Assembly: GCA_037447605.1 (NCBI GenBank)
Contig: CM074808.1
Coordinates: forward strand, 3,596,001 to 3,660,000
DNA: 64,000 nucleotides
From: Zygnema circumcarinatum SAG 698-1b
Lineage: Eukaryota > Plantae > Zygnematophyceae
Direction of reading: 5' to 3'
The notes under the pieces were generated by a model. The model was not told where the DNA came from. It searched no databases and saw nothing but the letters and a program-made list of their open reading frames with translations. Position numbers and translations under genes: made by a program. Shown here one piece after another: positions 17,470-61,437 of the stretch (position 1 is the first letter of the stretch; the number at the start of each line of letters is the position of its first letter).

Positions 17470-20400
17470 TTAACCTGCTAATGTCGAATTAAACAGATTG
17501 AACGTGTACTGCTGCAGCTGCACCACGTCCCTCGGATGCGCGTACCCGGTGTTGTTCTGACGCAGATTCGTCAGATTTGCTTGTATTGCCTGTGCCATTC
17601 GACCCACACATCGGTAGAAAAAAAAAATGTATTCAGCAAATGCAATTCCATCATTTGCATTCACCTTTGAAGCACTTCAAAATCCCCTCAAGCCAATCAG
17701 GGCATGCGATTACGACTTTATCAAGGATAAAGTGATAAAGTCATGTACCTGCAATTGAGTTGACAATGCGGGCAACCCCGCGGCCGAGCTGTTGAGCTGC
17801 GCGACCATTGACGTGATTTCTCCAAACAAGACCTTGTTGACGGCGTTGATGTCATCTGAGGCGACTTTCGAGGCTCCGTACACTCCGAAGGAAGCGAGAA
17901 GTCCCGCCACGACGCCGGCAATGATAAGCGTCAAAACCCACCCGAAGAATGTCTGCAGAGGTTTCCCAATAGAAAAAAATGGTCAACACATGTGGAACCT
18001 TTCTTTTCCCAGGAAATAAAAAAGGAGGGGGGGGGGGGGGGGGGGGGGNNNNNNNNNNGGGGGTGGGGTGATTTTTTCAAAGCGCTGAGTTTTTATTGTT
18101 ATGCAGTTGCGTCTTTAAGTTGAAGTTTCTAAATGTTTTTTCCGATTGACCGCTGGATGTATGGTATGTGCCGCAACGCTCACCCTCAAAAGGACAAGCC
18201 AGTTCACTCCCCTGAAGCCCTCAAACAGCCCGATGGCTAAGATGGCTCCTGTGATGACTTGGGTGGTTGATACCGGGAGTCCTGTACGCACCAAAACGGA
18301 AAAAAGAAACAAATTGAGACCATGAAATGACTGATCGTGGCATGATTAGCATAGTGTCCGCCTCCTCTCATGATAAATTTTTCATTTTTTGCACTACATA
18401 CGGAAAATGTGCTTATCCCTTCGACAAGAGCGGAGAAGAGGGATTTAATCGCCAGCAGAATCTCTGCTGTCCACTAGGCTAAGGTTGGTGTGGAGCCAGG
18501 TAACATAATGAAGGGAAAGGGGAGAAAAACAGTGAAAGAAACAAACTCCGAAAACTTACCATATCGCGAGGCCAACAACACCACAACGGCAGTTGAAAGT
18601 TCAGCCGAGAACCCTCGAGAGTTCGTCAGTTTCGCCACCTTTACACCGAGGACGCGCATGATTTTATATCCAAAAGTGGCAAGGCCCAGCACAATACCAG
18701 CGCCACCTGTTTCCCAAAAGCCCGTGAATGCCATGAATTTCCATGGACAATAATGCAATATGAATGCGCTTCTACTTAAAGCAGGGAAGGAGGTGGTTGC
18801 TCCACAGAAGCAGCAAGATTACCAAGAGCATAAATCCACTGAGGCACGGGTGCTTTTTTGGGAACTTGCTGTGTCCGCCAAATCGCATAAATTGCTGCAT
18901 AGGGTCCGACTGCATTCGCAACGTCATTGGATCCGTGAGCGAAGGAGACGACCATGGCGCTGAAAACCTGGTAAGAAAACGAGGTCGAACGGCCACTCAT
19001 TAGTTTTCGTGTACATGTGTTTTCTTGGACGACTTTAGTTAGAAGCTTGAAATTTCTTATGAGCTTCCATATTGTGGATACAAGAGGGTGCCAAGACAAG
19101 ACAAGAGGTGTCAAAATTACCTGGAGGTAGCGGAAAAGTCTTTCAGTCTTATAGTCAAAGACCTCCGCATGCTCCCATACTGCAGTTGTGGCAACATCTG
19201 TGCCGATTACACCATGCACTTCGTATGTGGAACCCTGCACGTCGCATCACATCACATCCAATAACCCTCATGTCAAGGAAAATCAAGAACACAAATCACT
19301 TCAGTTCAATGACCCAAATCATTAATAGACCAGTAGTCTTCCATAGTAATGAATCTTCAAAGGAGCCCATAGAGGGAGGCCAAGTTATCATACATATGTG
19401 ACGGCCCGAGTAATGGGATTTTGCGTCAATAAGCGTCCAAATTTTGTGTCCGTAGAAAAGTTACGCCATCTTTCGGTAATGCGACTGCCAAAGGTACCTG
19501 CATAAAGGCTCAACGAGTATTTGTTAAAGAAAGTTCGAAATGACGTGAAGCATATAGATCTGAAACATAAGCCAGTCACCCATATTTTAAAGCCTACCTC
19601 AAGTTTTCCAGGATCTATTCACTTTAATCTTCTCGCGAAATGCACGGGTGAAGGATGTACTTACTATTAGTTCCCTCCAAATTCACGTCTTGCATTCCTG
19701 GTTGACCTGTTCCTCCTGGCTCCATCTTCCCCTCTTCGATCGCCTTCTGTCTGCAAAATTCCCCACAGCCACCGTCAAAAAGAAAGCATTTCAGAAAAAT
19801 TACAGAAGCCCATGGCTGTATCGGTAAATCGGCTTCGATTCAGCAAAGGCACTATTGATTACTGCAATATAGAAGCTGCTCAGAAGTTGCTCCTCGACGC
19901 TTTCATGACCTCAATTGCGACTGTAGCCACACACTTTTTACCTGCTTAGATAGGAGGAATCTCCCTACCTATTCATTTCATCCTCCTCACGGTTCACGGC
20001 TCTCCTTAAAATGGGCATCACTATCAGAAGCGTCAGTACTCCAAGTGGGACAGCGCAAGCGACTGAAATCCATACTGCCTTGCCATCGGACACTTTGTCC
20101 CAACTTGCGTTCTTGTTTCCGGTTTGAATAATGAAAAGTACAATGATGAAGAACGTGAGGGCAACGAAAGCAGGCAACAGCTGCGCATTCCCCCACCAGG
20201 AAGGACAAGGGTGTGAGCATATCACACAGGGAAAATAAAAGAAAATAAGGAAACTTCATGACTTTACGTCACTTCTCTCTCCGTAGTGCTCTTACAGTTC
20301 TTTCAGAAGGTCCATTTAGATCGGACAGACAAAAGTATAAGACGAAATATGAAAGTTTCTCACTTACATAGAAGCCTCGAGTGAAGCTGTGACGTGATCG

Positions 20401-24470: not shown

Positions 24471-27400
24471 TCATTCCACAACAAGGAGGTTGTTTGCAGA
24501 GAGCCCCGATCCAACAGTCTCCCAGCCGGGAGCGATTCTCCACTCCCCATCCACGAGGAACTTCAACTCATATCTGCAGAGCACATAAGTGCAAGTTCAA
24601 GAAGTCAAGTACCATCAACATAAGAAGCCAAATGCTGAAGTCAGAACCCAAAAAAAGGCCAACAATGATATGATATGAAGTAAATATTAAAGCGCGTTCG
24701 TTGTACCTTCCAGGCCTAAGTTTCAAAGTGGCAGTGAAGCGCGTATATGTGCCAGTGGATTCTGGAGACATCTGCTCTCCATATAGCCAGTTATCAAAGG
24801 ACCCCATCACCTTCACATCCTGCAAGCATAAAAATATGTGGAGGAGGTAAGTAGAGTCATGTGCTAAGAAACAGGAGAGACGTCATCCTCATCTCTCTCT
24901 CTCTCACTCTCTCTCCCTCGTCCACCCACTCTCTCTCTCTCTCACCAAGAAGCCAGGAAGATCTCTCTGATGAAAAGATGCCCATCAAGGTGGAAACTGG
25001 AAGCATTGTGCATGCAGGTTTGCAGTGAGGTTTGTCTATACAATGGCTGCGTTATCCGGCAAAAAATGTTTGAGTCAAAAGAAGTCAAACCCGGGAATGA
25101 AACACAGCCATTGCTTTGCTTTTGCACGTCAGTGTATGCGCGCTTCAGCATCTGCAGCCTTTCGAGCTTCAGATTCAACGGCAAGATTGAAACGTGCACC
25201 TCTTTTGAGGTTCAAGTGGAAAATCTTAAAAAAACATGTTAAATATTGGGGGGTGAAAATGATGATGATGATTGTATCACAAATGAATTAAGTAGACATC
25301 GTTTTCCTTTTGGATTAAGTGGGAACACTTCGGAAAACAAGGAATTGTAGAGTCTTTGAGATTGTCAATCTTTAACAGTGTGCAAAGCAATATCGGGGCT
25401 TCAACTCTGCAAGATTTCATCTTTTATGGATGATCTAACGCAGGAAATCAGCTCTTACCTCCGCCATTCCGTACCACTCCACTGCCACATCCCGCAGATA
25501 CAATGCGTCCACTCCTGTTGTGTGGCCCTTCATTGTGTTGTGCAATTCTGTCCCAAAATAACCGAAATTACGAAAAGCATGCAATGTTAAATCACGGCGC
25601 TTTCCTGCTTCACATGTTGAGATTCCCAGTCCAATTCTTCATATATAGGCCTTCACAGTCAGATTTGAACTGAAAACTGTGAGAACCAATACAGCAGCAA
25701 AAAAAAGGACACCTGAAAGGAGTATTTCATTATTTACTATATACTCACATAAGTTTCAAACTAACAGAAATTATGGGCAAAGAAGGCGCCAAAATGCGAG
25801 CGCTAAGAGCTATATTCCATTAACAACGGTGAACCAATCTTCATGTACTGACTTTCTGTCTTATTGAAGGCTTTCCAAGTAGCCATCACATACATGCAGC
25901 ATGAATGCAGTAACGTTAGATGCTACAAGAATGAGTTGCATTGAGGCAAATAGAAGGAAAGAATAAGCTTCATCTTCTAAGGTGGTCCGACCCACAAGAC
26001 ATTGTCGACAAAACGAAAACTATCAGAACCAGCTTTTCTCGGTATCTTCCAATAAAGACTTTCTTCTCATCTCCAACAAAATGATTGGGGGATGAGAGGC
26101 CAAAAAAACTCACCCTCCAGCTTAAAGGCCATATGGGAGTACACAAATCTTCCGTTTATTTTCATCGTAGAAGCTTTGGATCCCTGCATAGCCACATCCT
26201 TTGCTAAAGCAGCTAACGCCTGAAAAACCCCAAATGCCCTTAATTTTTCTTAGTAATAGCCCCTCTCCCATTTTCGGAAAGCCAACTTCCACTTCCCTCC
26301 CTCCCCCCCCCCCTCTCTCCCCCCCCCCCCCCCGCTCCGACAGACTCTCTCTCCCTTTCTCGCTTCTCACCTTCAACTCTGCTTCCATGGAAGCGAGCTC
26401 TGACTTGTAAGTATTCAAAGCCTCTTCTCTCTGTTGAAGCTGCACACCTCCCCCAGACACACAAGGTTGGTTCTTGAGTCAGTTCCGTTTCCCGAAACAG
26501 CAATTGCAGACAGTTGAAAGATCAGCCCAAAATCTGGAACTTCAATCTAAAAAAAAATCAGCCTAAAATCAGCCTTTCCAACTTTTTGCCACAAAATTTG
26601 AGCGATAATTTGAGAATTTCGGAAACTGTACAGACCTCGCGTTGGAGGTGGCGGTTATATGCGTTCGCCTCACTGAGCTTCGTATTCAGTCTCCTTCTCA
26701 AAGCTATTAACTGCATATCAAGGTGCAGGAGAAAGAGTAAGCAGACTGCGGTAGACAGAGAGTGAGAGAGAGAGTGAGAGTGAGAGGGGAGGTAGGTCGG
26801 AAACAGACAAACTTGCGTCAATTCGGCACAACGTTCACATTTGTGGCACACTTTGCAGATGCTTAAATCCTCCAAATAGAAATGATGAGCCTTGACCCAT
26901 CTCGCATGCAGAAGACATACTTCTTTCGGATGCACAATACCGCCAACTTTACAATATTGACTTGTGCCTCTGCTCCAGTGAGCAGGGGAACAGATTCACA
27001 AGTTTATTCACACTATTCTACATGCTATTTCAGAATCATTTTTTGGATATGCAACGAAAGCGAGATGATCCCGAGGATACTCTTGGAAGCTTCCTCGTCA
27101 CCACCGCTTGATTCCAAGTTTTGATAACCACATTACATCGTCTTCAAAGCAAAAAAACTCTCCTTTCCATGTCTTCTCTCCTCTCCTCCATCCCTCTATC
27201 CTTCCCGCCTTCCCTCCCTCCTCCCTTCCTACAGTTTGGAAGCAGCACAAACGCACCTCCGTTTGATCAACTAATACTGGAGCCGCTTTCACATCATCTG
27301 TGGACTGAGCAGTCCCATTTGATCTCCATCCTGAAGCAGCATCAGCAACCGCAATCCTCTGCACGGACCGGCTCGCCGAATTCGAGGATGCTGCACTCCC

Positions 27401-43894: not shown

Positions 43895-45412
43895 ATGGCG
43901 GCAGTGGCGGTCCTGGTCCTGTTGGCGCTGGTCGGCGGCGCGGCGGCGGCCGTGACGGACGTGTTCGCGCCCGCGTGCGGATCGCTGCCGGGGGGGACCC
44001 CCACGCGAGGTGAGACGGAAACTGAAACTGAAACTGAAACTGAAACTGAGCAAAAGTGTGAACGAACTGCTGAGATCAGCTGTCGTGCGTTAGAGGCGAG
44101 GCTTGACATGTGCACAGAATCTCGTTTCTGTTTTTTTGTGCAAGGAAAGAGAGGCATTGGCTTGGATCTATGGTTGTGAGACGTGACTGATCAAAGGAGT
44201 CATTTTTTTTTTAATATTAATTTAGTTTCTATCCTTTTTCGTGCTTGTATAATTCAAGTTTCGTGTATTTTAGTTTAAAGTTTTTGTTTTTTTGTTTTTC
44301 CTATCAAAACGTGACCGGGGGTGGGACCAGGTTCTGCTTGCCCTATTTCTTCCCTTTGATCCATGTCGTGAAGCATAGCATGGATGTTGACACGTGTGAG
44401 GTGATGGTGCTGACACGTGGCATGGCAGGATGGAAGAAGTGGAGCGACGCGAGCGCGTGGGCCAATGGCGTGGTGCCAGGTGGCGGCCGGGACGCGGTGG
44501 TGCCCTGCAACGCGGGGATCGTCCTCGACGTGAAGACCGTCGTGCTCGACAAACTCATAATCAACGGCTGGCTCAAGTGGGTGTGGGAGGGAGAGAGGGA
44601 GGGAGGAGGGAGGGAGGGAGGGAGGGAGGGAGGGAGGGAGGGAGGGAGGGAGGGAGGAGGGAGGGAGGAGGGAGGGAGGGAGGGAGGGAGGAGGGAGGGA
44701 GGGAGGGAGGGAGGGAGGGAGGGAGGAGGAGGGAGGGAGGGAGGGAGGGAGGAGGGAGGGAGTGAGGAAGGGAGGGAGGGAGGGAGGGAGAGGGAGGGGA
44801 GAGAGTGGGGGATGGGGAAGTGGAGGGAGGGGAGGGAGGGTAGGAGGGTGGGAAAGTGGGAGAATGGAAGGAGGGTGAGGGGAGGAGGAGGGGGGAAGAG
44901 GGGGGGAGGGGGTGGAGTTAAAACTAGAGGGAGAGGTAGTACGAAGTGAGAGAGGAAAGGGGAGTGGGAAGGAGGGGGGAGGGGAGAGAGCGAGAGGACA
45001 GTGAGACCAGACAGAGACCTTCAGGGTGGTCGAGAGACAGAGTGTGGGACAGACAGACAGAGAGAGAGAAAGTGGGCCACGTTACAGTACCAAGGGCTGC
45101 TTTCCCATTGCCCCCTCCCTCCCTCCCTCCCTCCCTCCCTCCCCCTCCCGCCGTCCCTAAACCCTCCCTTTGCGCCTTGGGGGGGAGTCTGCAGGGTTCA
45201 GGACGCGGGGCCCTTCCAGGTCTCCGCGAACTTCGTGGTGGTGCAGGGCCGGCTCACTATCGGCACGCCCTTGGCGCCGTACGGAGGGAAGGTGACCTTC
45301 AACCTCACGGGGGGCGGCTACGAGTACACCGTCACTCAGGGCACAAAGCAAATGCCGATCGGCACAAGGGCGTTCGCTGTGGTAAGCGCACCATCCATGC
45401 CTATAGACACAT

Positions 45413-45484
<72 letters not shown>

Positions 45485-47978
45485 TTGTATTTTTATTTCC
45501 TTTTGGTTAATTTTTGAATTAGATGGTTTTTTTTTAATCTTCTTAAAATGGTTTCATACTATTTCGAAGCTGTTCTGTCCTATAGCCTGATGGGTCACAC
45601 GATTTTCTTGTTTTTTGTGATGTTTCATACTACGTTTTATGGGAAAACTAAAAGAAAAATTTGCTCTTTGAACTTGAACCTGAACCTGCACCTCTACCTG
45701 TAACTGTAACTGTAACTGAAACCGAAACCTGAAACTGCAACAAAGTTGATGTCCGTGACCTAGAACAGTTCCATGTTCCATGTTGCGCAGGTGGGCGGGT
45801 TGGTGGAGATGAACGGGATGTACAAAAATCAACGGTCCTGGACGACGCTCCTTGAAACGGCTCCGGCCGGCGCGAGATCGATCCTCGTTGCCGGCGATTT
45901 ATCTGCATGGCCTGTGGGGGGCACAATTGCAATTGCTTCCACGGATTACAATTACAAGCAGGCGGAGACTCGGCGAATCACCTCTGTTGTGACACGTGAG
46001 TGGGCCTTCTGCCCTCTTCCAAACAAATAGAAAGTAAAAAATAAAAATAAAAATAGGGGGTAAAGATCACCAGAAGCAACTCATCAACTTTGCATGCCGA
46101 GAATGTTTCAAACAAGAAACCTAAAAGGTGATCTTTGTTTAAAAGGGAGCGGTGTTGAGAGAGACGCTCTTGCAATCAATGGATGCAGGAAAGAGATACA
46201 CCTTGCTGAACCTGGACCGACCCCTTAACTACATGCATTGGGGAGTCCCCATTCAGACGGGAATACCTGGAGTGACAATGGACCAATCTGCGCAAGTGGC
46301 GCTCCTCACACGTGCCATTGTCATTCAAGGATCTCCCAATCCCTCCGACCCTCTCATAGGTGAGAGAAATGGTTCTTTAAAGCATGAAACGTTGGAGGCG
46401 GGAGGTGGGGGAGAGAGAGGGAGGGAGAGAGAGGGAGAGGTGGGAGGGGGGTAATGTTCGAGTGAAGCGCAGAGAGGGAGAGGGAAGGGAGGGTGCGTAT
46501 TAGCGGGAAGACAAGGGAATATGGAGCGAAGGGGGAGAGAGAGGTTTGGGGAGGGACGGAGAAGAGAGGCAGAGCCTAAAATTTCAAAGGAGAGTGCGAA
46601 GAAAACGTGAACGTAAATCAGTTTCACTTAAAAAAACCCAGCAAAAAATTGACACACGCTCTTGAAACGTGACGTTGAAGGTCCCTATCCCCCCCTCCCC
46701 CCCCTTAATTTCTAAACTCTCAAATAAATTATCTTCCCCTCTTCCCTCCCTCTCCCTCCCTCCCTCCCCCTCCCCCTCCCCCTCCCCCTCCCTCCCTCCC
46801 TCCCTCCCCCTCCCCCTCCCCTCCCTCCCCCTCCCCCTCCCCCTCCCCCTCCCCCTCCCCCTCCCCCTCCCAGGTGGCCACTTCATAGTCGCCCAGACCC
46901 CTCTCGCGCAGCAGATTCTGGGCGTAGAGTTTGTGAGCATGGGCCAGCAGGGCCTCCTCGGCCGCTACGCCCTCCACTTCCACCTCTGCCAGTCGCTGGC
47001 CGCGGGCGCGCTCGTCTCCAAAAGCGCGATCCACGACTCGCTGCAGCGCTGCCTCGTGGTTCACGGCACGCACGGACTGCGCGCGGACGGAAACGTCGCC
47101 TTCAACACGCGCGGACACTGCTTCTTCGTGGAGGACGGGATCGAGAGGGACAATACCTTCTCGCGCAACTTGGGCTTCTCGACGGTGAGGGAGGGAGGGA
47201 GGGAGGGAGGGAGGGAGGGAGGGGGGAAGGGAGGGAGGGAGGGAGAGGGGCGGAGGGGGGGGGAGAGGGGTGGAGGTGGGGGAGGGAGTGGGGGGGGCGG
47301 CGAGGAGGGGGAGGGGGTGGAGGGGTGGGGAGGGAGAGGGGAAAGGAGGGGAGAGGAGGGGGGGGGGAGGGGAGGAGGGGGGAGATGGGGGCGCGGGGAG
47401 GTGGGGGAGATGGGGGGCGAGGAGGGGGGAGGGGTGGGGAGGGGAGAGGGGAAGGGGATGGGGGAGGAGGGTGGGGAGAGGGGGAAGGGAGGTGGGAGGA
47501 GTGGGGGGGGGGGGTGGGGGGGATGGGCGAAAGTAAGGAAGAGAGATGGGAAGGGAGGAGAGAGGAGGAGGGGGAGGAACGTGTAGGAGCGGGGGTGGGG
47601 GCGTAAGGAGGGGTGGGAGGCGAGTGGGGACGTGGGGAAGGAGCGAGGAGGAAAGTAGACCTTGTTGTTAAATTTAACCATTCTTAGCCTCATAGTTTTC
47701 TAAGTGCCTGGCCTCAGAATGCAACCTCGTTTTTCTTTAAACAGACATTGTTTTTATCGAGCTTCTGCATGAATTCCTTCCATCGGAATTCGTGTTGATC
47801 CTTTTTCGGTTGCTGTTTTGGGTGAGCAGTTGCCAGCTCAACGCTTAATCCCTCAAACTCAGGGAGGAGCCACTCAGAGCGATGATGCTCCTTCAACCTT
47901 TTGGACAGCGAGCGTTGCCAATAAATGGATCGATAATGTTGCTGCCGGCGGTGCAGACTCAGGGTGGGCAGCTCTCCC

Positions 47979-48045
<67 letters not shown>

Positions 48046-49836
48046 CTCTTTCTCTCTCTCTCTCTCTCTCGCTCTTTCTCTCCTTCCTTCTCTCCCTTCC
48101 CTCCGTTCTTCCCTTCTCTCTTCTCCTCTCCAGTCCTCCCTTCTCTCTCTCTCTCTCTCTCTCTCGCTCTTTCTCTCCTTCCTTCTCTCCCTTCCCTCCG
48201 TTCTTCCCTTCTCTCTTCTCCTCTCCAGTCCTCCCTTCTCTCTCTCTCTCTCTCTCTCGCTCCCTCCCCCTCTGGACTCCCTCTCTCTCCATTTCTCACA
48301 CCTCGTCGAATCAACTGAGTGAACACTGTGAAACTTACCTCATCTCTTCTTTAACCCTTCTCTATATATCCGGAAACTTTGAGTATTTAAAGCATCTAAA
48401 CTCTGCATCTGGTAGCAAAATAAGAATGGCTTCTGCTTCTGCGTGCAGGTACTGGTTTCAGTTAGCTGAGACAGTCTTGGGGCTATCAGCACTTTTCCCC
48501 GGCGCTGATAAGATTTACCCCAAATTTCAGCCACTAATGAGATTTGTTGGAAATTCTGCACACTCGTACATGCGAACCGGCTTACGAACATATTCAATTG
48601 GCTACCGGCCGAGAAGAAATGGAGGGGGTTCAGCATTTCCCCATCCTATTAATGCTGTGAGTCTCTCTCACATAGATCTCTCTCATTTCTCGCATAAGTC
48701 CTCACTCGTGTTGCATCTTCTGACTGTTTTAACACTTCCAAAGTACCAAAGACAGTTTTCAATTTTTGAGAGCTTGCATTTGGACTTAGTTGCTAAGGGA
48801 ATTCTTAAAATTTTATTGAATTTCAATAGAACAGACACCATACAGACTGATTGAGTATTAAGTTAAAGCCTGAATAGCTGTTCGAGCGCCTGAAGCATAT
48901 TTTTTTTAAATGCTTTTTTTTTTCCTTTTTGTTGTTTATACAGCCGGCAGTGGACGTGGTAATCAGTAAATTTCAAGCGTGGAAGAATGCTATGGACGGG
49001 TAAGTCAGAAGACTCTAAACTCACTGCGGGTAAACCTTTCTAATCAGCCTGAACATAAATTAAGACTCTATTTGGCCGGATTATTGAATGTAGACAAGGT
49101 TTATTTGAACCTGATGATATTTTTGCCTTCAAATTTAACGCTATATCTCTTCGGCTGTTCATTCTTCATTGTATATTCACAGACTGTTCATCCATGAAAC
49201 GGATTCCATTATTTTGGATGAAGCCATGATTGCTGATAATGCTGTTGTGGGAGTTGAGCTCCATCAAGTGGAACACTGCATTGTAAGTTCAGCCATCCTT
49301 CAAAATCAACTCAACTGCTTTCAACTCTCTGCAGCTCCCACCAGACCACAAGTAACACTTACGGGTAGGAGAAAAAAAGGGATTTATTTTACTTTTCTGC
49401 AGTGGCTCATAATTCTGCTTTCTCTTTTTTTTTTTTTGCCTTTTTTTGGCTATTGTTTTGTAGATTCAAAACTCCATCATTTTGGGTGAAACTGCGAACA
49501 TTGGGAACCCTGATGGATGCAATGATGTGCGTAATGAGTTCGCTAATTGCCGAGCTATAAGTGGCTGTCAATTTCCTGTCGATCCGAAGAAAGCTCGCTC
49601 TGCAGGAGCAGGGCAGACCAAGAGAAATGGAATCATGATTGGAGTTTTGATAGATCAGAGTGAATATCCCTCCCACGGGCTTACTATTGATGGAAACTCA
49701 AGGGGAGCACCTTTACCTCAGCACTTTAGAAACGTATCGTTTGGAAAATTCAACGCCGATTGCCGAGTGGCTGCCGGCATCTCTGGTACAGACCGATCTC
49801 TCTCACTCTCTATCCCTCCTCTCTCCCCCTCTCGTG

Positions 49837-49873
<37 letters not shown>

Positions 49874-52800
49874 TTCTCTGTGGCTCCATTGCACTCTCTC
49901 TGCCACCCCTTCCCCTTTATTCCCTTCTCCCCTCCCTCCGCCCTCCCCCCTCCGCCTCCCTCCCTCTCTCTTTCACTCCCTCTCTCCCACTCTCTCTCCC
50001 CCCCTAACTCCCTATTCCCTCCCCTCTTTCTCTCTCCCCCTCTCTCCCCCCCTCTCCTTTTTCTCTCTCTATTACCCCTATCCCCTATACCCTCCCTCAC
50101 TCCCCTCCCCTCCCCCCTCCCCCTCCCCTCCCCCTCCCCCTCCCCTCCCCTCCCCTCCCCTCCCCCTCCCCCTCCCCTCCCCTCCCCTCCCCCTCCCCCT
50201 CCCCTCCCCTCCCCCTCCCCCTCCCCCTCCCCTCCCCTCCCCTCCCCTCCCCTCCCCCTCCCCTCCCCCTCCCCCTCCCCCTCCCCCTCCCCCTCCCCTC
50301 CCCTCCCCCTCCCCCTCCCCCTCCCCTCCCCCCTCCCCCTCCCCTCCCCTCCCCCTCCCCCTCCCCCTCCCCCTCCCCTCCCCTCCCCTCCCCCTCCCCC
50401 TCCCCTCCCCCTCCCCCTCCCCCTCCCCCTCCCCCTCCCCTCCCCTCCCCCACTCACACCCTCCTCCCTCCCTCCCTACCCCCAGCCAACGGCAAGACCC
50501 CGAACGTCCTCTTCAGTGCGGGCCACAGCGGGCGCGCCCTCCGCTGGCTGGACGGCGGCCCGCGCCTGTACTTCGCGCCGCGGCCCGACGGCATTTTAGG
50601 GTTCGAAACGGCCGCGGACGCGGGCCCGCTCGCGGCCTTCTATGTGTTCCGCGACGAGGACGGGTCCACAGTGGGCGGGAGGGGGGGCTTCGCGGTCACT
50701 AACTCGCCGGCACTATTGCCCGCGGGGGGAAGGGGATGCACGGTAAGATTCGTTGGTTTTGTGGGAGGGGGGAGGGGGAGGGGAGGGGGAGGGGGAGGGG
50801 AGGGGGAGGGGAGGGGGAGGGGGAGGGGGAGGGGGAGGGGAGGGGGAGGGGAGGGGGAGGGAGTGTGTGAGAGAGCGTAAGGGTTTCAGGTGTTGGTAAT
50901 GGATTGGATTCTGGTGAGAACTGTATGGGAATGCCTGCGGAGTGTTCTGGATATGATAAGGCGTGAATAAGGCGTGAGGGAGAAGGTTTGAATGGGTGAG
51001 TGAGTGAGAACTTCTTCTTCGTTTCTTGGTTGCTGCAGTTTATGCCGAAGAGCAATGGCTATTTCTGCCCTAATACGTGCTACCGAAGCATTGCTGTCAC
51101 GACGTCGGGAATCTCAAGTCCTCCCACTTTCACCATCACAAGAGTGGCAGTAAGCACTTTCTAATGCCCCCAACCTGTTTCAATTTCTTGCACATTATTT
51201 AGACTGTTCCACTAAGAGTTTTGCTCTGACCTTCCTTACAATCTTACCGTCATTTGTAACTTTATGCACCCAAAAGCTATTGTTCCCGATCAATCTGAGC
51301 TTCAATTGCTGCCATTTTGCCTTCCAGGATGGCGTGTCGATGAAGGTCACTATGCTTTCAACAACCACCAACTTCATAAACCTGTTGGCAAACTCTCCAT
51401 ACAAAATTTCCATCACCCCCACTCCTGCATCAGTGAGCTTTTGGTATGGTGATCCGGAGGGCTGCGATGGCTCCCTTTCCATTCAGCTTGATGCCCCCTC
51501 CGGAAAGTCTTGGAAATCTACAGATGCTTCCTGGAGGTAAGAAAATCTCTACAGAAGAAAATGTTCAGTTTCACAAACATTTGCGATCAAGCAAAACATG
51601 TCTTCGTCAAATAGTTTTATGTATGTTTCCACATGAATTTCTGCACTTTTTCTTATGTGAGCGTGCTTTATTATAGTCTGAGGGTCGAACTCTGTTACAT
51701 GAATTTCTTAAACCTTTCTTTAAACCTTTCTGTGCATATGCAGGCAGTGTGCAGGATCAACTACGCCAGTATCGACTGTCTCGCAAATCTTCTATGTCTG
51801 CAATCGGGGCCAAAACCCTATCCTGCAGATTGAGCTGGGTGGGAAATCACGTCGAACTGTGACACTGTACCTAAATTCCGGCACACCATCATGCTCAACC
51901 ATGTATGCCATAGCCTGCTTACCTTCGCTCAAAATCTGAAAACTGCATTCTGAATCCTCGTCACTTTTATACGTTAGCTTCGTCTGGTTGGATTCAAATA
52001 TCTGAATTATGTGGTCGTTTAAAGCCAACGTGAATGCTTCTCAAATGATGTTGATGTTGATGTTGATGTTTTGCAGGGAATGTGGGCTCGTCCCCACAGC
52101 CGGCCAATGGCAGTACAGCGACAATGGTCAGGGTTTATCTTCGGGCTGGTCGGCTCCGTCGTCAAGAGAAGGAAGTTGGAGGACGGGAACGGCTATGTTC
52201 GGATATGGAGTCCCTGTGGTTACAACAATCCGCACAGGGAATCAAAATGTACCTCACTCTCTTCCCCTCTCTCTCTCACTCTCTCTCTCTCTCTCTCCCC
52301 CTCTCTCTCTTGCTCTCTGTCTCTCTTTTTCTATAACAGACACACACCGAGCCCCTCTCTCCCTCTCTCCCTCTCTCCCCCTGCATTGTGACTACTTGCA
52401 AGGACATTCCTTCTTCCCATGTAACTCAGACTTCTTATAATTATTGGAATACATTGGTGCTTCAAAGTTTAGGGAAGCATGGAGGGTACGAGAAAGGTCA
52501 CATCATTTACAATGAGCATTACCAATTCTAATGTTCTACGTTTTGGGCTCATGATTGGACAGAATGGGGTCGTTTGGTACTTCAAATCTACTTTCAACTA
52601 CATTAAGGCCAGTTGCATGACAACCCTAAAGTTTGGCATCGTTGTCAATGACGGCGTTGTGGTATACATGAACGGGAAAGAGTTTTACCGAAACAACATG
52701 CCTTCAGGCTCCATTACTCCATCAACAAAAGTAAGACCTGCACTCAAGCCCTACTTCTGAATGTTCTCTTCTTCTTCAAAAGGATAGCCTTGAACTTGAC

Positions 52801-53098
52801 GAAGAAGGAGACCACCTTTGTCTGCCTAAACCTGCTTCACTTGCAAAGAACTAATCCTTCCCCCCCCCCCCTTTGTCAACTTGTGATATTACAGGCCAAT
52901 GGAGCCGGTCAACAGTATGACTTTCCGGGCTTTACCGAAGTGAGCTTAGACATCAATAAGGCGAATCTGGTTACTGGATCGAACACAATAGCCGTTGAAG
53001 TGCACGCGTGGGCGGTCTGGTCGTGGAACATTCGATTCGACCTTTGGATGACGGCGGTCGGCTCCGGCTGCTCCAACCCTAAATTTTACCGCATGTAG
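43895..53098 (+). CDS. Secreted G8-domain / parallel beta-helix protein with a C-terminal galactose-binding-like domain; paralogue B (~1,080 aa)
   Basis: Signal peptide MAAVAVLVLLALVGGAAA. 18 exons (approximate): 43895-44009, 44429-44576, 45195-45381, 45791-45995, 46189-46359, 46874-47184, 47830-47962, 48449-48656, 48944-48999, 49183-49282, 49464-49786, 50486-50742, 51039-51149, 51328-51536, 51744-51902, 52077-52248, 52563-52730, 52894-53098. Same motifs and exon pattern as paralogue A. Confidence 0.9.
45417..45480. repeat. (TA)n microsatellite, intronic
   Basis: Directly visible. Confidence 0.97.
48071..48260. repeat. ~95-bp tandem duplication bounded by (CT)n in a G8-B intron
   Basis: Unit gctctttctctccttccttctctcccttccctccgttcttccc...ccagtcctcccttc starts at 48071 and 48166. 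Confidence 0.85.
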
Positions 53099-54540: not shown

Positions 54541-56685
54541 TCAGCATGCAGCCAGAACCTCCAATAGCGCCGCAGCGAAGCGGACCTGCGTGGCTTCTTC
54601 TATGACATGGAAGGAGGGCACATGCACAAAGATGCATGTGGCTCCACTAACGAGAGCAGCGTGACGGAGTGACTGGTAGTACACATAGTTACAGACAAAG
54701 CGCCCAGCATCATCCGAAAGCGTCACGTCAAAGCCCTTCGCCCGAAGCTGTTCTGCAATCCAACCAGTCGGAAGCGTCGTCTGCAAAGGTCCAAACATGG
54801 AAATTCAATAAAAACTGACCAAAGATTACGGAGATTCACAAAGTGTTGGAAGGTAACAAGGAACAGGCAAGATATGACGGGCCTGAACATAACCTGGACT
54901 GAGGGAAAAGGACTTCATCTGAAACAAACCATCGTCGCTAAAAGGAAATGGTCCAAATTTAAGTTCCATATAAATTTTCCTGACATGGAGTGCCTTAACT
55001 GGTGAGGAACATGTGAAAGGAAACTTGTGAGGAACAATTCATTAACAAAGTATAAGGGAGTATAGTTCCTACTTCACACTTGAACAACTACCAGTCCAGA
55101 AATGAAGCACAGCACGAGGAAAAATGAGTTGGTCTGTTGCAAACGAAAACTGGAATGACAGCAAAAGGACAATCTGTGTGGGCCAAAACATCACCTTTCG
55201 AACAAAGCCAACGTGCCCGTCCTCCTTGACTATCATTTCTCTCTGCACCTCAAGCGAAACAGAAAACCCCATCAGGAAGGAGTGATGAGAACAACGATAG
55301 CCGGGTATTGTAATGACAAGGAAGTAAGGAGAAGCTCAAAAGAAAACACGACGGGAGAAATGAACAGAATGCTTAGTCAGAGGTAAAGCCCGAATTGAGA
55401 AATGTGAGACACAGAAAGGAAAACGAAAGGAAGAAACCGAATGACAGAAATTAATAGAAAATGGCGGAAAGTCAAATGAAGGAGACGAAACTCCAGATGA
55501 GAAAAATGAAACATAGCAGGAAGAAACGCAAGGCCAAGAGTTGAAGTGAGTGCAGGAATAGCCGCGAATTCGAAGGTACGTGGAAAAGGCAGAAATGAAG
55601 GAGACATAGAACCAGAGAGAGGGAGGGGGGGGGGGTTGCGAGTAGACACATTATCAGTCATTCAAGAAAAAAAGGCCCATATATGCGTGAGATGCACTAG
55701 GCTAAAATCAGAGCAGGGCATCAAAGATCAACCTGAGGCTGCCAGCCCATTTCATCTGCGCACCGAAAGGTCGCTTCATTCACAGCCCGCCGCTCAATGG
55801 CAAATTTGTATGCTCCGCTGTTCACACCGAAATGGACCTGCATTGACTCACAGCCGTCAGTCCCTTCCAATCCATTTCCGATCGCGCTTTTCAATAGTAT
55901 TGTAGCTCAACCTTCTGACGACACCAAGGCTTCGGTGTACAGTAGGAGTGGGACGTGACTCCACATAGGTGACCTACAGCCCTTCAAACGACAAATTCTG
56001 CTGTGACTTCTCCGAACATTACGCATGTAATTCTTACAGAGTCTGAGTCAGTCAGAGTAAGAGTTCTAGTCCTTCGTGCTGAGATTCTGCAATCTGACGT
56101 TTGACATGAAGGGACTGGAGGTTTTACTCCTACTAGTGAATAAATTTTCCAGTTGGCTGTTACGCAAATGATACAGAGCTTTAAAAATGAACTTCCAACA
56201 CTCAACAATAATCCCAAGTAGTTTCCAGAAGGCATACTACATCAACTTACCCAAACCACTCGGGAGCCCTTCAAGGGAACAACTGGCCCTCCACCAACAA
56301 TCGTTTCCACATCGCCCAAACGTTTCGCGCTATTTTCCTCGCCCTTCTGCTTATCTTCTCCTACCCCTCCACTTTCCTCCTTCCTCTCCTTGTCGCTCCC
56401 TCCCTTCTCGCCCACAACAAGACTCAGGCCGCCCGCCTCCTTCCCTACCAGCCCCTCTCCCTTGAATGGCCTTTCTAACAATTGAATCAGCTGTGAAACC
56501 GCACCCTGAGCTGCTGTCTCCAGAATGGTACAACTTCCTAAACAAGCTCCAGCGGGGAGGGAGCCATTCTTTTCAAGGTAAGTCGGAAGCTCCATCGCAA
56601 TAGTCTCCGTTGGATTCACGGGAACGCCTTGAAACTTCTTGAAACCCGTTACATGGAACACGGTGGCCGGGCCCTCCGAGCCCAT
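54541..56685 (-). CDS. Pyroglutamyl-peptidase I (pyrrolidone-carboxylate peptidase, peptidase C15)
   Basis: Exons ~56251-56685 (MGSEGP..HVTGFKKFQGVPVNPTE), 55733-55837 (VHFGVNSG..FAIERRAVNEATFRC.DEMGWQPQ), 55196-55243 and 54541-54780 (SDDAGRFVCNYVYY..FVHVP). Glu/Cys/His catalytic motifs are present. Confidence 0.92.
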
Positions 56686-57688: not shown

Positions 57689-58600
57689 GTACACGCTTAG
57701 TTGAGAGCAGTTATTTCGTACATGTACGGCAGGACAGTACAGTACCGTATGGACAAACATGTACGGCTATACGGCGCCTTGAAAGGACGAGCATGTCCGT
57801 ACGGTACCGTCAGATTTGTAGCGGGACCTACTGCAACCAACCGGATTAGACTGATCCATCATCACAGTTACAATAAGCGTCGAAAATTACGTCAACCAAT
57901 CCGATGCCTTCCTCGTTGCCAGGACCAATTTTATCTGAAAAATTGTCGCCCGGAATGCATGCTCATCCGTACATTGAAATTGTCGTCCCGATCTGACCGT
58001 TCAAGGTCTGTAATCGACGGTCCATAGGGCACGGAAGGACCGTACACGTCAGCATCGCTAGAAACGGCCTCCGGTCCTGCGGAAAGCCTTTCCGGCGCGT
58101 CCGCTGCCGCCCGGAGGCTGACGCCCGCCGACAAAGGGTAGGAGCCAGGCTCTATGCTGGAAATCTACACGCCGTTCAGTGAATCATTACGGGTTCATGC
58201 ATTTCTATTATATAGTGTTAAGGTCTGTTAAACAACGGAATAGCTGCACATGGACAAGGAACAGGGCAGGATTCTGGAGGATAGTGTGAGCGTAGTCAAG
58301 CATCTGACCAATGGCTAGTTGAATCAAAGTGCATACGTGGCGTGTCGTGAGTGGCCCAAAGCTGAAGGCTTAAGTTCGGCATGGAGAAAGGCCACAAATC
58401 GGACCATTAATTGCATCAACCATTGGAACGACTACCAACTATTGGTTCACGACCCAGCCAACCAATAGTTGCCAACCATTGGCAATGCTTGCTGACAATG
58501 TACAGGTAAGGTGAATCCAGAAACAGTGGTTGACTGGCTGCCAACCATTGGACGGCCAACCATTGCAATCCAATGGTTGTCCAATGGTTGCCGATCCAAT
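57689..58600. promoter_or_regulatory. Divergent intergenic region with a GTAC cluster (57689-58045) and a CCAAT-box array (58422-58600)
   Basis: 10 GTAC and 8 CCAAT/ATTGG counted by eye. Lies between the peptidase and selenoprotein W genes. Confidence 0.45.
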
Positions 58601-58761
58601 GGACCGACATGTGCAGGTCCAGGTCTGCACTCTGCAGGCTCCATCCAGTCCTCGAGCTACTGCTGCTGCTGCTGCTGCAGGATCAGGGTTAGGGTTAGCG
58701 CGTGTCTTCTATCTGAGCGCTTCTCCAGACTGCTGCTGAATCTTTCGCCGCGCCTTCCGCC

Positions 58762-60440
58762 ATGGCGAGTCTCCGCATCAACATTCTTTACTGGTGAACG
58801 GCGCTGCTCCTGCGCTTTCTGCCGCCGCATCATTTCGAAAGAAGGGGAGGGGAGAATGGGAGAGGAAGGAAGGGGAGTGTGCAAGAGCAGTGCGAGGGTC
58901 AGGGTCGGAACTGGGGAGGGGGGGAAAGAGAAAATAGGAATAAGGGAGAGGGAAGTGGGGTGAGGGGACAGGGAAGAGAAGAGTCGAAGAGGGAAGAGGG
59001 GAGATGGGAGTGGAGAGTTGAAGAGTGGATACGAGAGAGGGGGAGGGAGGGGAAGACTTTGAGAAAGGGAATGAAGAGTGAAAATTGTTTTCTGACGTTC
59101 AGATGCCTGTTGTGTGGTGGCGTTGATTTGGCACATGTATCGGCTTTATTTTCCTGGTTTGGCTTTCTGTATCGGCAGCGGTGCCTGAGGTGAGTCCAGA
59201 GCTTAGAAATTGTACTTTTTTATTTTTCTTTGTTCGACAATCGCGTTGGATGAATGAAGATATTGCTTACTTCCTCTACGCTTTATTCTTTCACCCGTTT
59301 AGGACATACTGTTTTAGTCATACGAAGTATCGTCAACCAAACAAACCACGATGTCATGAGTAATCGTATGGTCGTAGATTCCGTTATCTGTACTCTCGAA
59401 TAACTCTGTTTCGATCTCTTCCCCTTTCTCCCGCCTCGCGATCTCTCTCTCATTCTCTTTCTTTCTCGTTTTCTCTTTTCCTATCTCTCTCGTTCTCTCC
59501 ATCTCCTTCCTTCCTTTGGTCTCTTCTTGTTCCTTGTGTGGTGGTGCTGACGTCAGGATTGACATGCAGGGTATCGTCGACGGGCTGTGGCCATTCAAGA
59601 TGCCCTAAATCAGAAGTTTCCCGGGCAGCTGGAATTCACCTTCCAGGCCACAACCACTGCAACCGGGTACTTGGGTCAGTGAACTTGCCACATAACACGG
59701 CTACATTCGACCTGCCATGGCTTTTTTCTCTCATGTCTCCTTTTATATTATTTATTTTTTCGTTTTTGTGCATGCGGTATGGATAGAATGTCTGAATTGA
59801 TATGGAACGTGAAACTGTTGCAAGAAGTTGTGTTGAGTTATCGCCCCGTTCTCATGGGCCTTTCTGTTCTCTTGAATGGTTTTTTGTTTCTGTAGTGTTC
59901 CAAAAACCTAGTGATGATGCTTCTTTCCAGTTTTCGGTGAATGCATGCATCGTGCTGAAAGGGCTGGTTATTGTTACCATCTTCTGGGCTCTCCCTCATT
60001 TTTGCTCCGTTTTGTTTCAGTCATGCGACTTATTATGTTATTCAGCGATTGCCTGTTTCTGATCGTTGCTGTCTTGCAGCCAAGACCAGTGTGAATGAAT
60101 GAATTATTGCTGTTTAAGAAGGAGGGGAGGTTGTTCCGGGTTTTGAATTGTTTGCAGAAGTGCAAGTTGTTGGCGGGCCCTTACTTCATTCGAAGAAGAG
60201 CGGTGACGGATATGTACGACTTATAGGCTTTCAAATCCTAAAAATCACCAGAACTCATCTAATAGGTTATAGAGACGGAAGAAAGTGGGCAATCACTCAG
60301 TTGCCCCGCTGCGTGCTTTACTCTTATGGAAATCCTATCTTTAAAGAACTTGTTTTTGGGTTTGACAGGTGGACTCCTCTGCGAAGATGCAGCGCATCAT
60401 CGACGGAGTCGCTGCATGTCTAGCCTCTCCCTCGGATTGA
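58762..60440 (+). CDS. SELENOW: Selenoprotein W (Rdx family, CxxU motif), 91 aa, Sec UGA at 59186-59188
   Basis: Exons 58762-58793, 59179-59189, 59570-59674, 60158-60213 and 60369-60440 (all GT-AG, total 276 nt) give MASLRINILYCGAUGYRRRAVAIQDALNQKFPGQLEFTFQATTTATGYLEVQVVGGPLLHSKKSGDGYVDSSAKMQRIIDGVAACLASPSD*. YCGAUGY, FPG.L, TG..EV and HSKK.GDGYVD are hallmark SelW motifs. Confidence 0.93.
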
Positions 60441-60650
60441 GGAGGGCCTACCTTCTGCTCTCTATGCTGCCAATTCTGTAGATGGTGAGATGCTCATAGA
60501 CAATAATAAGTCAAGCAGCATGACGATTCAGTTTCTTTTTTTCGGTTGTTTATGAGTACTGAAAACCTGTACTGCCTGTCGGCCATCAAGAGCATATGAA
60601 GTGAGAGTTGACCTCATGAAGGGCGATGGGGCTTGCAGGTCATTTCCGAG

Positions 60651-60747
60651 GTTGCTTGAGCATGCATGTGACAGAATCGACTGAAAGAGGACACGTCCTC
60701 AGGGAGATTCTCGACTTCGCCATTTTTTTGGTTTTTGCTCTTGCAGC
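60651..60747 (+). promoter_or_regulatory. Candidate type II SECIS element in the SelW 3' UTR
   Basis: Core GUGAC (60668-72) opposite CGAC (60712-15), giving tandem G.A/A.G pairs. Helix II AGAAUC/GAUUCU plus CU/AG. Unpaired AAA at 60684-86, 11 nt after the core. Apical mini-stem GAGGA-cacg-UCCUC. Possible helix I GUUGC..GAGCA / UGCUC..GCAGC. Confidence 0.75.
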
Positions 60748-61437
60748 TGAAGTGATGTTCCATAGACAGAGGCGGTTGATGAGGGCTTGTAACTGCTCTG
60801 CTTAGCGGAAGCGCAGCATCAGTTGTAAACAGAGTGAATGCTTGCAGCCATGTCTACATACATTGTAGCAGGCATTGAAATCTCAACAGAAATATGATGG
60901 AGGTCTCTCTCTGGAAAGTCAGTCCCATTGGAATGAGCAGTGCTGGCCTTGTCTGCCCATCCTCAATCTGCATATTTTATATGTGTGGTTACCCAAGTCT
61001 ACCATTTGGCCAACCATTTCGCTGTGCACATACTGTAACGCGTTTGTTGAAACTAAAGTTTGAACTGCGCATCAGCATGGAGAGCCGTGGAACTTTTGCC
61101 GTATCGTACGGACGGTAAACGCTCACGCGCGATTAGAACTGGCACTGGAACTGGCGGAGTGACATGGACGCAGTGCTGGGTCACGCAGTTCTGTGTGATC
61201 AAAGTCCCAGTTCCGAAGTTTGTTCGACAGCGAAACACCGTACGAACCGTTTGCGAATGTTCTGGCAAGTGCGGCACGTAACCAATTTACAGGTGTACGA
61301 ATGGGAAACGACAAGACCTTACTATAAAAGCGTACGGTATTTGAACTTTCCGAGCCACGTGGCAGAGCACGTCAGCACGGGGAGCCGGCAATCCTCGTGT
61401 TGGACAGCGGAGAAACGATTCGGTCCAGATAAATTTT

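What the first reader, a model, noticed from the sequence alone, without database searches (positions are those of the whole stretch)
58762..60747. Hidden selenoprotein W gene (in-frame UGA plus SECIS) in a plant-lineage genome
Seen: five GT-AG exons splice into a 91-aa SelW with CGAU, and a SECIS-like hairpin lies ~230 nt after the stop. The ORF track does not recover it, and standard gene callers would probably truncate or omit it. Established: land plants lack selenocysteine machinery while many green algae retain it. Inference: with PTST1 and a plant-type PMT nearby, this looks like a streptophyte alga still decoding Sec, which bears on when Sec was lost on the way to land plants.
Basis: partly seen in the sequence, partly recalled or inferred. 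Interest (0 to 1): 0.9.

Follow-up and report, generated by a model that had tools for sequence, protein, structure and literature searches.

The report
Selenoprotein W gene, streptophyte alga
This is a real, transcribed gene for selenoprotein W, a small redox protein whose active site is very probably selenocysteine read from a UGA codon, in what looks like a green alga close to land plants; the catch is correct, but such algae are already known to use selenocysteine.

Summary
Confirmed, with one correction. Five coding exons splice into a 91-residue protein whose only internal stop is UGA, in the CxxU motif. Exons 1, 3, 4 and 5 tile a SelW profile in order. Transcript contigs from three studies show every junction, including the 11-nt exon carrying the unedited UGA. 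So the gene has six exons, and the SECIS (60668-60715) lies 73 nt after the stop in the mRNA, not about 230. Mammalian SelW has this same layout (PMC3316567). The intron inside the motif's Cys codon recurs in limpet, Daphnia and four unidentified eukaryotes. The SECIS has the right core, stem and AAA and is the only pattern hit in 64 kb, but helix I is weak and covariance models scored it modestly. Sec insertion is inferred, not shown. All streptophyte algal classes, Zygnematophyceae included, are already reported to keep the Sec machinery (PMC6627142). The scan earlier noted other selenoprotein genes in this genome (unchecked), but no other SelW. New member of a known kind; low interest.

The parts
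58650..58761 (+). 5' leader (transcribed part of exon 1; true start not known, no upstream ATG in this stretch)
   Evidence: spliced contig pieces begin at 58569-58650; ATG scan
58762..58793 (+). Exon 1, coding part: Met to the first two bases of the Cys11 codon; intron 1 splits this codon
   Evidence: aligns to SelW profile positions 2-9
59179..59189 (+). Exon 2, an 11-nt microexon holding the end of Cys11, Gly, Ala, the Sec UGA and the first base of Gly15
   Evidence: its letters are found between exons 1 and 3 in contigs of X1, X2 and X3
59186..59188 (+). In-frame TGA, inferred selenocysteine 14 of the CxxU motif
   Evidence: the same column is W (UGA under the database's translation) in 64 of 66 homologues, checked as TGA in L002 and L004
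59570..59674 (+). Exon 3
   Evidence: TIGR02174 CXXU_selWTH E=6.6e-4; SelW profile positions 15-48
60158..60213 (+). Exon 4 (carries the SelW LHSKK-GDGY signature)
   Evidence: SelW profile positions 50-66
60369..60484 (+). Exon 5: last 23 codons, terminal stop TGA at 60438-60440, then 44 nt of 3' UTR
   Evidence: SelW profile positions 67-84
60485..60638 (+).
   Evidence: joint in X1, X2 and X3; a low-depth retained piece 60466-60626 in X2
60639..60917 (+). Exon 6, non-coding, carries the SECIS (3' end at or beyond 60917)
   Evidence: contig pieces 60638-60917 in all three runs
60668..60715 (+). Type II SECIS: 5' core 60668-60672, helix II 60673-60683 with 60702-60711, apical AAA 60684-60686, mini-stem 60687-60700, 3' core 60712-60715
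   Evidence: best match in the 3' region to a model built from other SelW SECIS elements, 11.5 bits; no Rfam hit
60650..60748 (+). Candidate lower stem (helix I): 60650-60662 with 60736-60748, with a weak 4-bp side hairpin at 60719-60732; predicted only
   Evidence: constrained fold; no close-in helix I predicted

Best explanation
A functional six-exon selenoprotein W gene. Shown: the pre-mRNA is spliced at five introns into an mRNA with one internal UGA in the C-G-A-U motif and a SECIS-shaped hairpin in a non-coding last exon, 307 nt after that UGA and 73 nt after the terminal UGA. Inferred from the established eukaryotic pathway: SBP2 binds the GA/AG core of the SECIS and eEFSec delivers Sec-tRNA to codon 14. 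Translation ends at the terminal UGA, which lies inside the 51-111 nt range reported as the minimum spacing for recoding and after the point where the family's proteins end. The product is a 91-residue thioredoxin-like (Rdx) thiol/selenol oxidoreductase that acts through the Cys11/Sec14 pair on protein cysteines; 14-3-3 proteins are the best-known partners of mammalian SelW and the likeliest guess here. When selenium is scarce, codon 14 should act as a premature stop with three exon junctions far downstream, making the mRNA a likely target of nonsense-mediated decay, as shown for human SelW.
For: Frame and splice sites. All junctions and the unedited UGA in three studies, exon depth about ten times intron depth. 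Colinear, gap-free tiling of a SelW profile by the separate exons; exon 3 hits TIGR02174; its one real hit among 50%-identity representatives is a limpet SelW whose closest solved structure is SelW, PDB 2NPB. UGA at the same column in homologues. SECIS unique in the window, 4/3000 in shuffles; the same UGAC/CGAC core occurs in another SelW mRNA, L008. Stop-to-SECIS distances of 46-113 nt in 15 other SelW loci, seven of them ending in UGA at 63-81 nt. Same six-exon layout in mammals (PMC3316567); minimum spacing 51-111 nt; NMD of SelW (PMC4105750); 14-3-3 binding (PMC8508763). Unchecked notes list SBP2, eEFSec and SepSecS genes in this genome.
Against: No protein or selenium evidence. Rfam finds no SECIS. 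My covariance models give 4.7 and 11.5 bits, not significant over 64 kb, although held-out SelW SECIS candidates scored no better on the whole (9.7-18.7 bits, one missed). The 3' core CGAC departs from the published KGAW consensus (PMC3753652) and helix I is weak. I could not check tRNA-Sec, PSTK or SPS. The runs are not on record as RNA, though spliced joints and the lack of coverage beyond 60943 show that they are.
Confidence: 0.9

Rival explanations
1. A transcribed relic: the gene is still spliced, but the SECIS has decayed or the Sec machinery is incomplete, so translation stops at codon 14.
For: Weak helix I and modest model scores. Zygnematophyceae are reported to have few selenoproteins, and none was detected in a Closterium lunula transcriptome.
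Against: No frameshift or extra stop; all family motifs are intact; core, helix II and AAA are in the right register; splicing is clean and abundant in three studies; unchecked notes list Sec machinery and six other selenoproteins in the genome.
Confidence: 0.05
2. A dual-UGA gene: the terminal UGA is also recoded part of the time, giving a longer protein with a second Sec and a cysteine-rich tail. Retaining the UTR intron (distance 228 instead of 73 nt) would switch this on.
For: The stop is UGA and is followed in frame by five-Cys-containing sequence: 29 codons in the spliced mRNA, 15 codons and another UGA if intron 5 is retained. A low-depth retained piece exists.
Against: Family similarity ends before the stop. 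UGA stops at 63-81 nt from the SECIS are common in SelW mRNAs with no such tail. Retained pieces of similar low depth are seen for every intron, as expected of pre-mRNA.
Confidence: 0.05
3. UGA is read as another amino acid (Cys, Trp or Arg) by a suppressor tRNA or a variant code, so the protein is not a selenoprotein.
For: An unchecked note mentions a UCA-anticodon tRNA on an Arg scaffold in this genome.
Against: The UGA sits exactly at the family's Sec position and is paired with a SECIS; the gene itself ends in UGA, so UGA is still a stop.
Confidence: 0.01

Closest known systems
Mammalian SELENOW (SelW1; Rdx family, Pfam PF10262, TIGR02174; PDB 2NPB)
   Same: About 90 residues, N-terminal CxxU, same downstream motifs; six exons with coding in exons 1-5 and the SECIS alone in exon 6 (average 38 nt into that exon in mammals, 29 nt here; PMC3316567).
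   Different: Coding introns 2-4 fall at other positions than in the animal genes I could read; here the Sec codon is on an 11-nt exon, against 25 nt in limpet and about 35 nt in Daphnia; the SECIS core is GUGAC/CGAC rather than AUGAN/KGAW.
Chlamydomonas reinhardtii SelW1 and SelW2, and algal SELENOW in general
   Same: Green-algal CxxU SelW. SelW1 was identified by mass spectrometry (PMC9404770), and SELENOW is among the most widespread algal selenoproteins, about 80% Sec-form (PMC7539508).
   Different: A streptophyte rather than chlorophyte host. I did not retrieve the Chlamydomonas sequences, so orthology to W1 or W2 and intron sharing were not tested.
Lottia gigantea tandem SelW genes (mis-merged as LOTGIDRAFT_172170) and Daphnia magna SelW
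   Same: 46% identity over exon 3; intron 1 at the identical base inside the Cys codon; Lottia has candidate splice sites for a 3' UTR intron ending 38 nt before the SECIS core.
   Different: Other coding introns differ; Daphnia needs no UTR intron (SECIS 70 nt after the stop); both end in UAA.
Selenoproteomes of streptophyte algae (Liang et al. 2019, PMC6627142)
   Same: Complete Sec machinery in all classes, including the Mesotaenium and 'Spirotaenia' genomes.
   Different: That survey found 1-3 selenoproteins in subaerial streptophyte algae and none in a Closterium lunula transcriptome; it does not name SelW in the text I could search.

Membership tests
Selenoprotein W (Rdx family) | N-terminal CxxU motif after the first beta strand | tested here: met
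   Y10-C11-G-A-U14-G-Y from the spliced exons
Selenoprotein W (Rdx family) | Sequence similarity over the whole Rdx/SelW domain | tested here: met
   Exons scored separately cover profile positions 2-9, 15-48, 50-66 and 67-84. Single exons stay below the curated whole-protein cut-offs (Pfam Rdx 12.8 of 22.6 bits; TIGR02174 19.9 of 34.2), as expected of fragments; the joined protein was not searched.
Selenoprotein W (Rdx family) | SelW rather than SelT, SelH, SelV or Rdx12: short single domain, no long insert or extension, LHSKK-GDGYVD signature | tested here: met
   91 aa; all named homologues found through the limpet protein are SelW; the signature is in exons 4-5. No tree was built.
Selenoprotein W (Rdx family) | Thioredoxin-like fold | not tested
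   The joined model could not be submitted; inferred from homology to PDB 2NPB through P0003
Selenoprotein W (Rdx family) | Sec actually incorporated; oxidoreductase activity | not testable with these tools
   Needs 75Se labelling, mass spectrometry or an assay
Eukaryotic type II SECIS | Located in the 3' UTR of the same mRNA, more than 51-111 nt from the Sec codon | tested here: met
   Exon 5-6 joint and contig to 60917; 307 nt from the Sec UGA
Eukaryotic type II SECIS | RUGAN / NGAN core with tandem G-A pairs | tested here: met
   GUGAC / CGAC. The flanking bases depart from KGAW, but C at these positions occurs in other SelW SECIS elements (L002, L008, L020, L023).
Eukaryotic type II SECIS | Helix II of about 11 nt, unpaired AA, extra apical mini-stem | tested here: met
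   AAA 11 nt above the core, -12.4 kcal/mol, 5-bp apical stem
Eukaryotic type II SECIS | Helix I below the internal loop | tested here: inconclusive
   No close-in stem predicted; a more distant 11-bp stem is predicted under constraint
Eukaryotic type II SECIS | Significant match to a SECIS covariance model | tested here: inconclusive
   Rfam: none. Own model: top hit in the 3' region (11.5 bits, E=0.047 over 477 nt) but E=6.3 over 64 kb; held-out candidates scored 9.7-18.7. SECISearch3 was not available.
Sec-decoding organism | tRNA-Sec, eEFSec, SBP2, SecS, PSTK and SPS in the genome | not testable with these tools
   Only the 64 kb window is readable; it has no tRNA. Unchecked notes list SBP2, eEFSec and SepSecS; none mentions PSTK or SPS.

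The most novel reading that the evidence does not exclude
The 3' UTR intron between the stop and the SECIS is as old as the Cys-codon intron, inherited from an early eukaryote and kept in this alga, limpet and mammals because it has a job: splicing it brings the SECIS close enough (73 nt) that the terminal UGA terminates, while retaining it (228 nt) allows read-through into a short cysteine-rich, Sec-containing tail. That would be a splicing switch on UGA meaning, kept across plants and animals.
Probability: 0.05. Interest if true: 0.6.

Novelty: new member of a known kind. Interest (0 to 1): 0.22.

Why it matters
As a gene model it is useful: automatic annotation will miss or mangle it, as it did for the limpet and Daphnia homologues fetched here. 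It adds SelW to the selenoproteins of an alga near land plants. If the unchecked notes on SelH, SelK, SelT, SelU, GPx and thioredoxin reductase hold, this genome has at least seven, more than the 1-3 reported for subaerial streptophyte algae, which would fit the view that aquatic lineages kept Sec until the embryophyte split. It does not move the date of Sec loss. The intron inside the CxxU Cys codon, shared with animals, is a small piece of evidence for an ancient spliced SelW gene.

Tried and rejected
Rfam search of the 3' region: no SECIS family at E up to 10. Unconstrained folding: no better than shuffles (z = 0.24-0.46), which is uninformative for a structure built on non-canonical pairs. 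PDB search with exon 3 alone found nothing. Two of the three representative hits (P0001, P0002) are repeat-protein artefacts. Exact look-ups of window peptides found nothing. The first covariance model, with flanks, missed the element over 64 kb and also missed most held-out candidates, so it was under-powered. Run X8 (same species label) laid nothing, so no close relative was available for conservation tests; the metagenome scan gave no recognisable streptophyte SelW. The idea that UGA-ending SelW mRNAs have shorter stop-SECIS spacing than UAA/UAG-ending ones was not supported (63-81 against 46-113 nt). The apparent acceptor site at 60747 is not used in the contigs. A 1997 paper on UGA stops in rodent SelW, recalled from memory, is not held and is not used as evidence. 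As the operators required, the joined protein was never sent to a search, profile or folding tool: searches were exon by exon, by reference; exons were joined only inside scripts to read the frame.

Full report
Observation. The region holds a plus-strand gene with coding exons at 58762-58793, 59179-59189, 59570-59674, 60158-60213 and 60369-60440, separated by GT..AG introns of 385, 380, 483 and 155 nt. They give 91 codons plus a stop, and the only internal stop is TGA at codon 14, in Y-C-G-A-U-G-Y (one search had exon 5 off by one base). The ORF list does not recover the gene.

Transcripts. Logan contigs of runs X1, X2 and X3, from three studies, show the joints exon 1-2-3 (the letters between exons 1 and 3 are those of the 11-nt exon, so the UGA is present and unedited), 3-4 and 4-5. 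No variant letter is listed in any exon, and exon depth is about ten times intron depth. The runs are not on record as RNA, but spliced joints and no coverage beyond 60943 show transcripts rather than genomic DNA. The contigs also reveal a fifth intron, 60485-60638, 44 nt after the stop. The last exon runs from 60639 to at least 60917. The SECIS is therefore 73 nt after the stop and 307 nt after the Sec codon in the mRNA; 228 nt is the genomic distance.

Protein family. Exon 3 alone hits TIGR02174 (E=6.6e-4) and weakly Pfam Rdx (E=0.14). Among 1.84 billion representatives its one real hit is P0003, a mis-merged pair of limpet SelW genes, 46% identical over 28 residues, whose closest solved structure is SelW, 2NPB. 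From there 833 homologues were found; those with names are SelW. A profile of 56 full-length ones is tiled in order and without gaps by exons 1, 3, 4 and 5 scored separately, and exons 3-5 are the top three segments of all six frames of the window. At the Sec column 64 of 66 homologues have W, which is UGA under the database's translation; I confirmed TGA in two loci. The joined protein was not searched or folded.

SECIS. At 60668-60715 there is a GUGAC core, a helix II of 6+2 pairs, AAA 11 nt above the core, a 5-bp apical stem and a CGAC 3' core. It is the only hit of my pattern on both strands of 64 kb, and 4 of 3000 shuffles of the spliced UTR gave a hit; the pattern was written knowing the candidate, so this is supportive rather than blind. 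Weak points: no Rfam hit, a 3' core that departs from KGAW (PMC3753652) and no close-in helix I. Another SelW mRNA, L008, has the same UGAC/CGAC core. Twelve SECIS elements from other SelW loci show strong covariation in helix II. A model built from them ranks the candidate first in the 3' region (11.5 bits) but not above background over 64 kb; held-out candidates scored 9.7-18.7 bits. I call it a probable type II SECIS.

Gene architecture. Mammalian SelW has six exons, coding in 1-5 and the SECIS alone in exon 6, on average 38 nt in (PMC3316567); here it is 29 nt in. Intron 1 splits the Cys codon of CxxU at the same base in both limpet copies, Daphnia and four unidentified eukaryotic genomic contigs (L014/L032, L017, L029, L039), and is absent from L004, L009 and L025/L026. 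It is very likely ancient. Introns 2-4 are not shared with these genes, so the microexon arose by a lineage-specific intron one base after the Sec codon. Limpet has candidate splice sites for a UTR intron ending 38 nt before its SECIS (sequence only). Daphnia, L009, L017 and L038 have the SECIS within 63-113 nt of the stop in genomic DNA and need none. Whether the UTR intron is ancestral or convergent is open.

The terminal UGA. It lies 73 nt from the core, within the 51-111 nt minimum spacing reported for recoding. Seven other SelW loci end in UGA at 63-81 nt, so this is ordinary for the family. Nothing here shows that the tail is made.

Mechanism. Shown: splicing, frame, motif, position of the hairpin. 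Inferred from the established pathway: SBP2 and eEFSec recode codon 14; the product is a small thioredoxin-like oxidoreductase using Cys11 and Sec14, perhaps on 14-3-3 proteins as in mammals (PMC8508763). The Sec codon is 278 nt upstream of the last junction, so selenium shortage should expose the mRNA to nonsense-mediated decay, as for human SelW (PMC4105750); the true stop, 44 nt from the last junction, falls under the 50-55 nt rule.

Organism and novelty. I could not name the organism. The neighbouring pyroglutamyl peptidase exon is nearest to a mostly streptophyte cluster (weak), an AMPK1_CBM exon at 24474-24596 fits a PTST-like gene, and earlier unchecked notes say Closterium-like and list SBP2, eEFSec, SepSecS and six other selenoproteins. 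Liang et al. 2019 found complete Sec machinery in all streptophyte algal classes, including Zygnematophyceae, and placed the loss in the embryophyte ancestor; a 2026 review repeats this (PMC13578239). SELENOW is among the most widespread algal selenoproteins (PMC7539508). I found no paper describing selenoproteins of Closterium in particular.

Verdict. A real, expressed SelW gene that very probably encodes Sec (0.9). New member of a known kind. Interest 0.22.

Noticed in passing
window 60650-60748 (+): The constrained fold places a weak 4-bp side hairpin (60719-60732) on the 3' side of the SECIS internal loop, above a distant lower stem.
   Followed up: partly
L001 2257-4350 and 5296-7520 (Lottia gigantea, KB200294.1): Two tandem, intact SelW genes, each with a Sec exon and an identical SECIS, are annotated as one chimeric hypothetical protein (LOTGIDRAFT_172170) that skips both Sec exons.
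   Followed up: partly
L004 (ENA ERZ25067590 contig): At least three Rdx/SelW genes within 6 kb, two of them checked as intronless with in-frame UGA; organism unknown; my pattern found no convincing SECIS nearby.
   Followed up: partly
L005 2001-2744 (Daphnia magna): The annotated SelW-like protein reads into intron 1 and skips the Sec codon; the true 5' exons with TGA are present in the DNA.
   Followed up: partly
window 56242-56685 (-): First coding exon of a pyroglutamyl peptidase I-like gene, transcribed divergently from SelW about 2 kb away; a shared promoter region is possible.
   Followed up: partly
window 58390-58615: A dispersed repeat of short CCAACCATTGG-type units just upstream of the SelW leader; many unrelated contigs lay on it at high depth, so it is a multi-copy element.
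   Followed up: no
window 18776-19240 (-), 24474-24596 (-), 44245-53098 (+), 1627-5772 (+): Other genes in the window: a PHO4-family phosphate transporter exon, a C-terminal AMPK1_CBM exon (PTST-like), a G8/CEMIP beta-helix protein, and a 1381-codon Glu/Gly-rich repetitive ORF that was not examined.
   Followed up: partly
window 9860-12335: A 2.4 kb almost pure pyrimidine (C/T) simple-repeat tract; similar purine/pyrimidine tracts fill many introns, including SelW introns 1 and 2.
   Followed up: no
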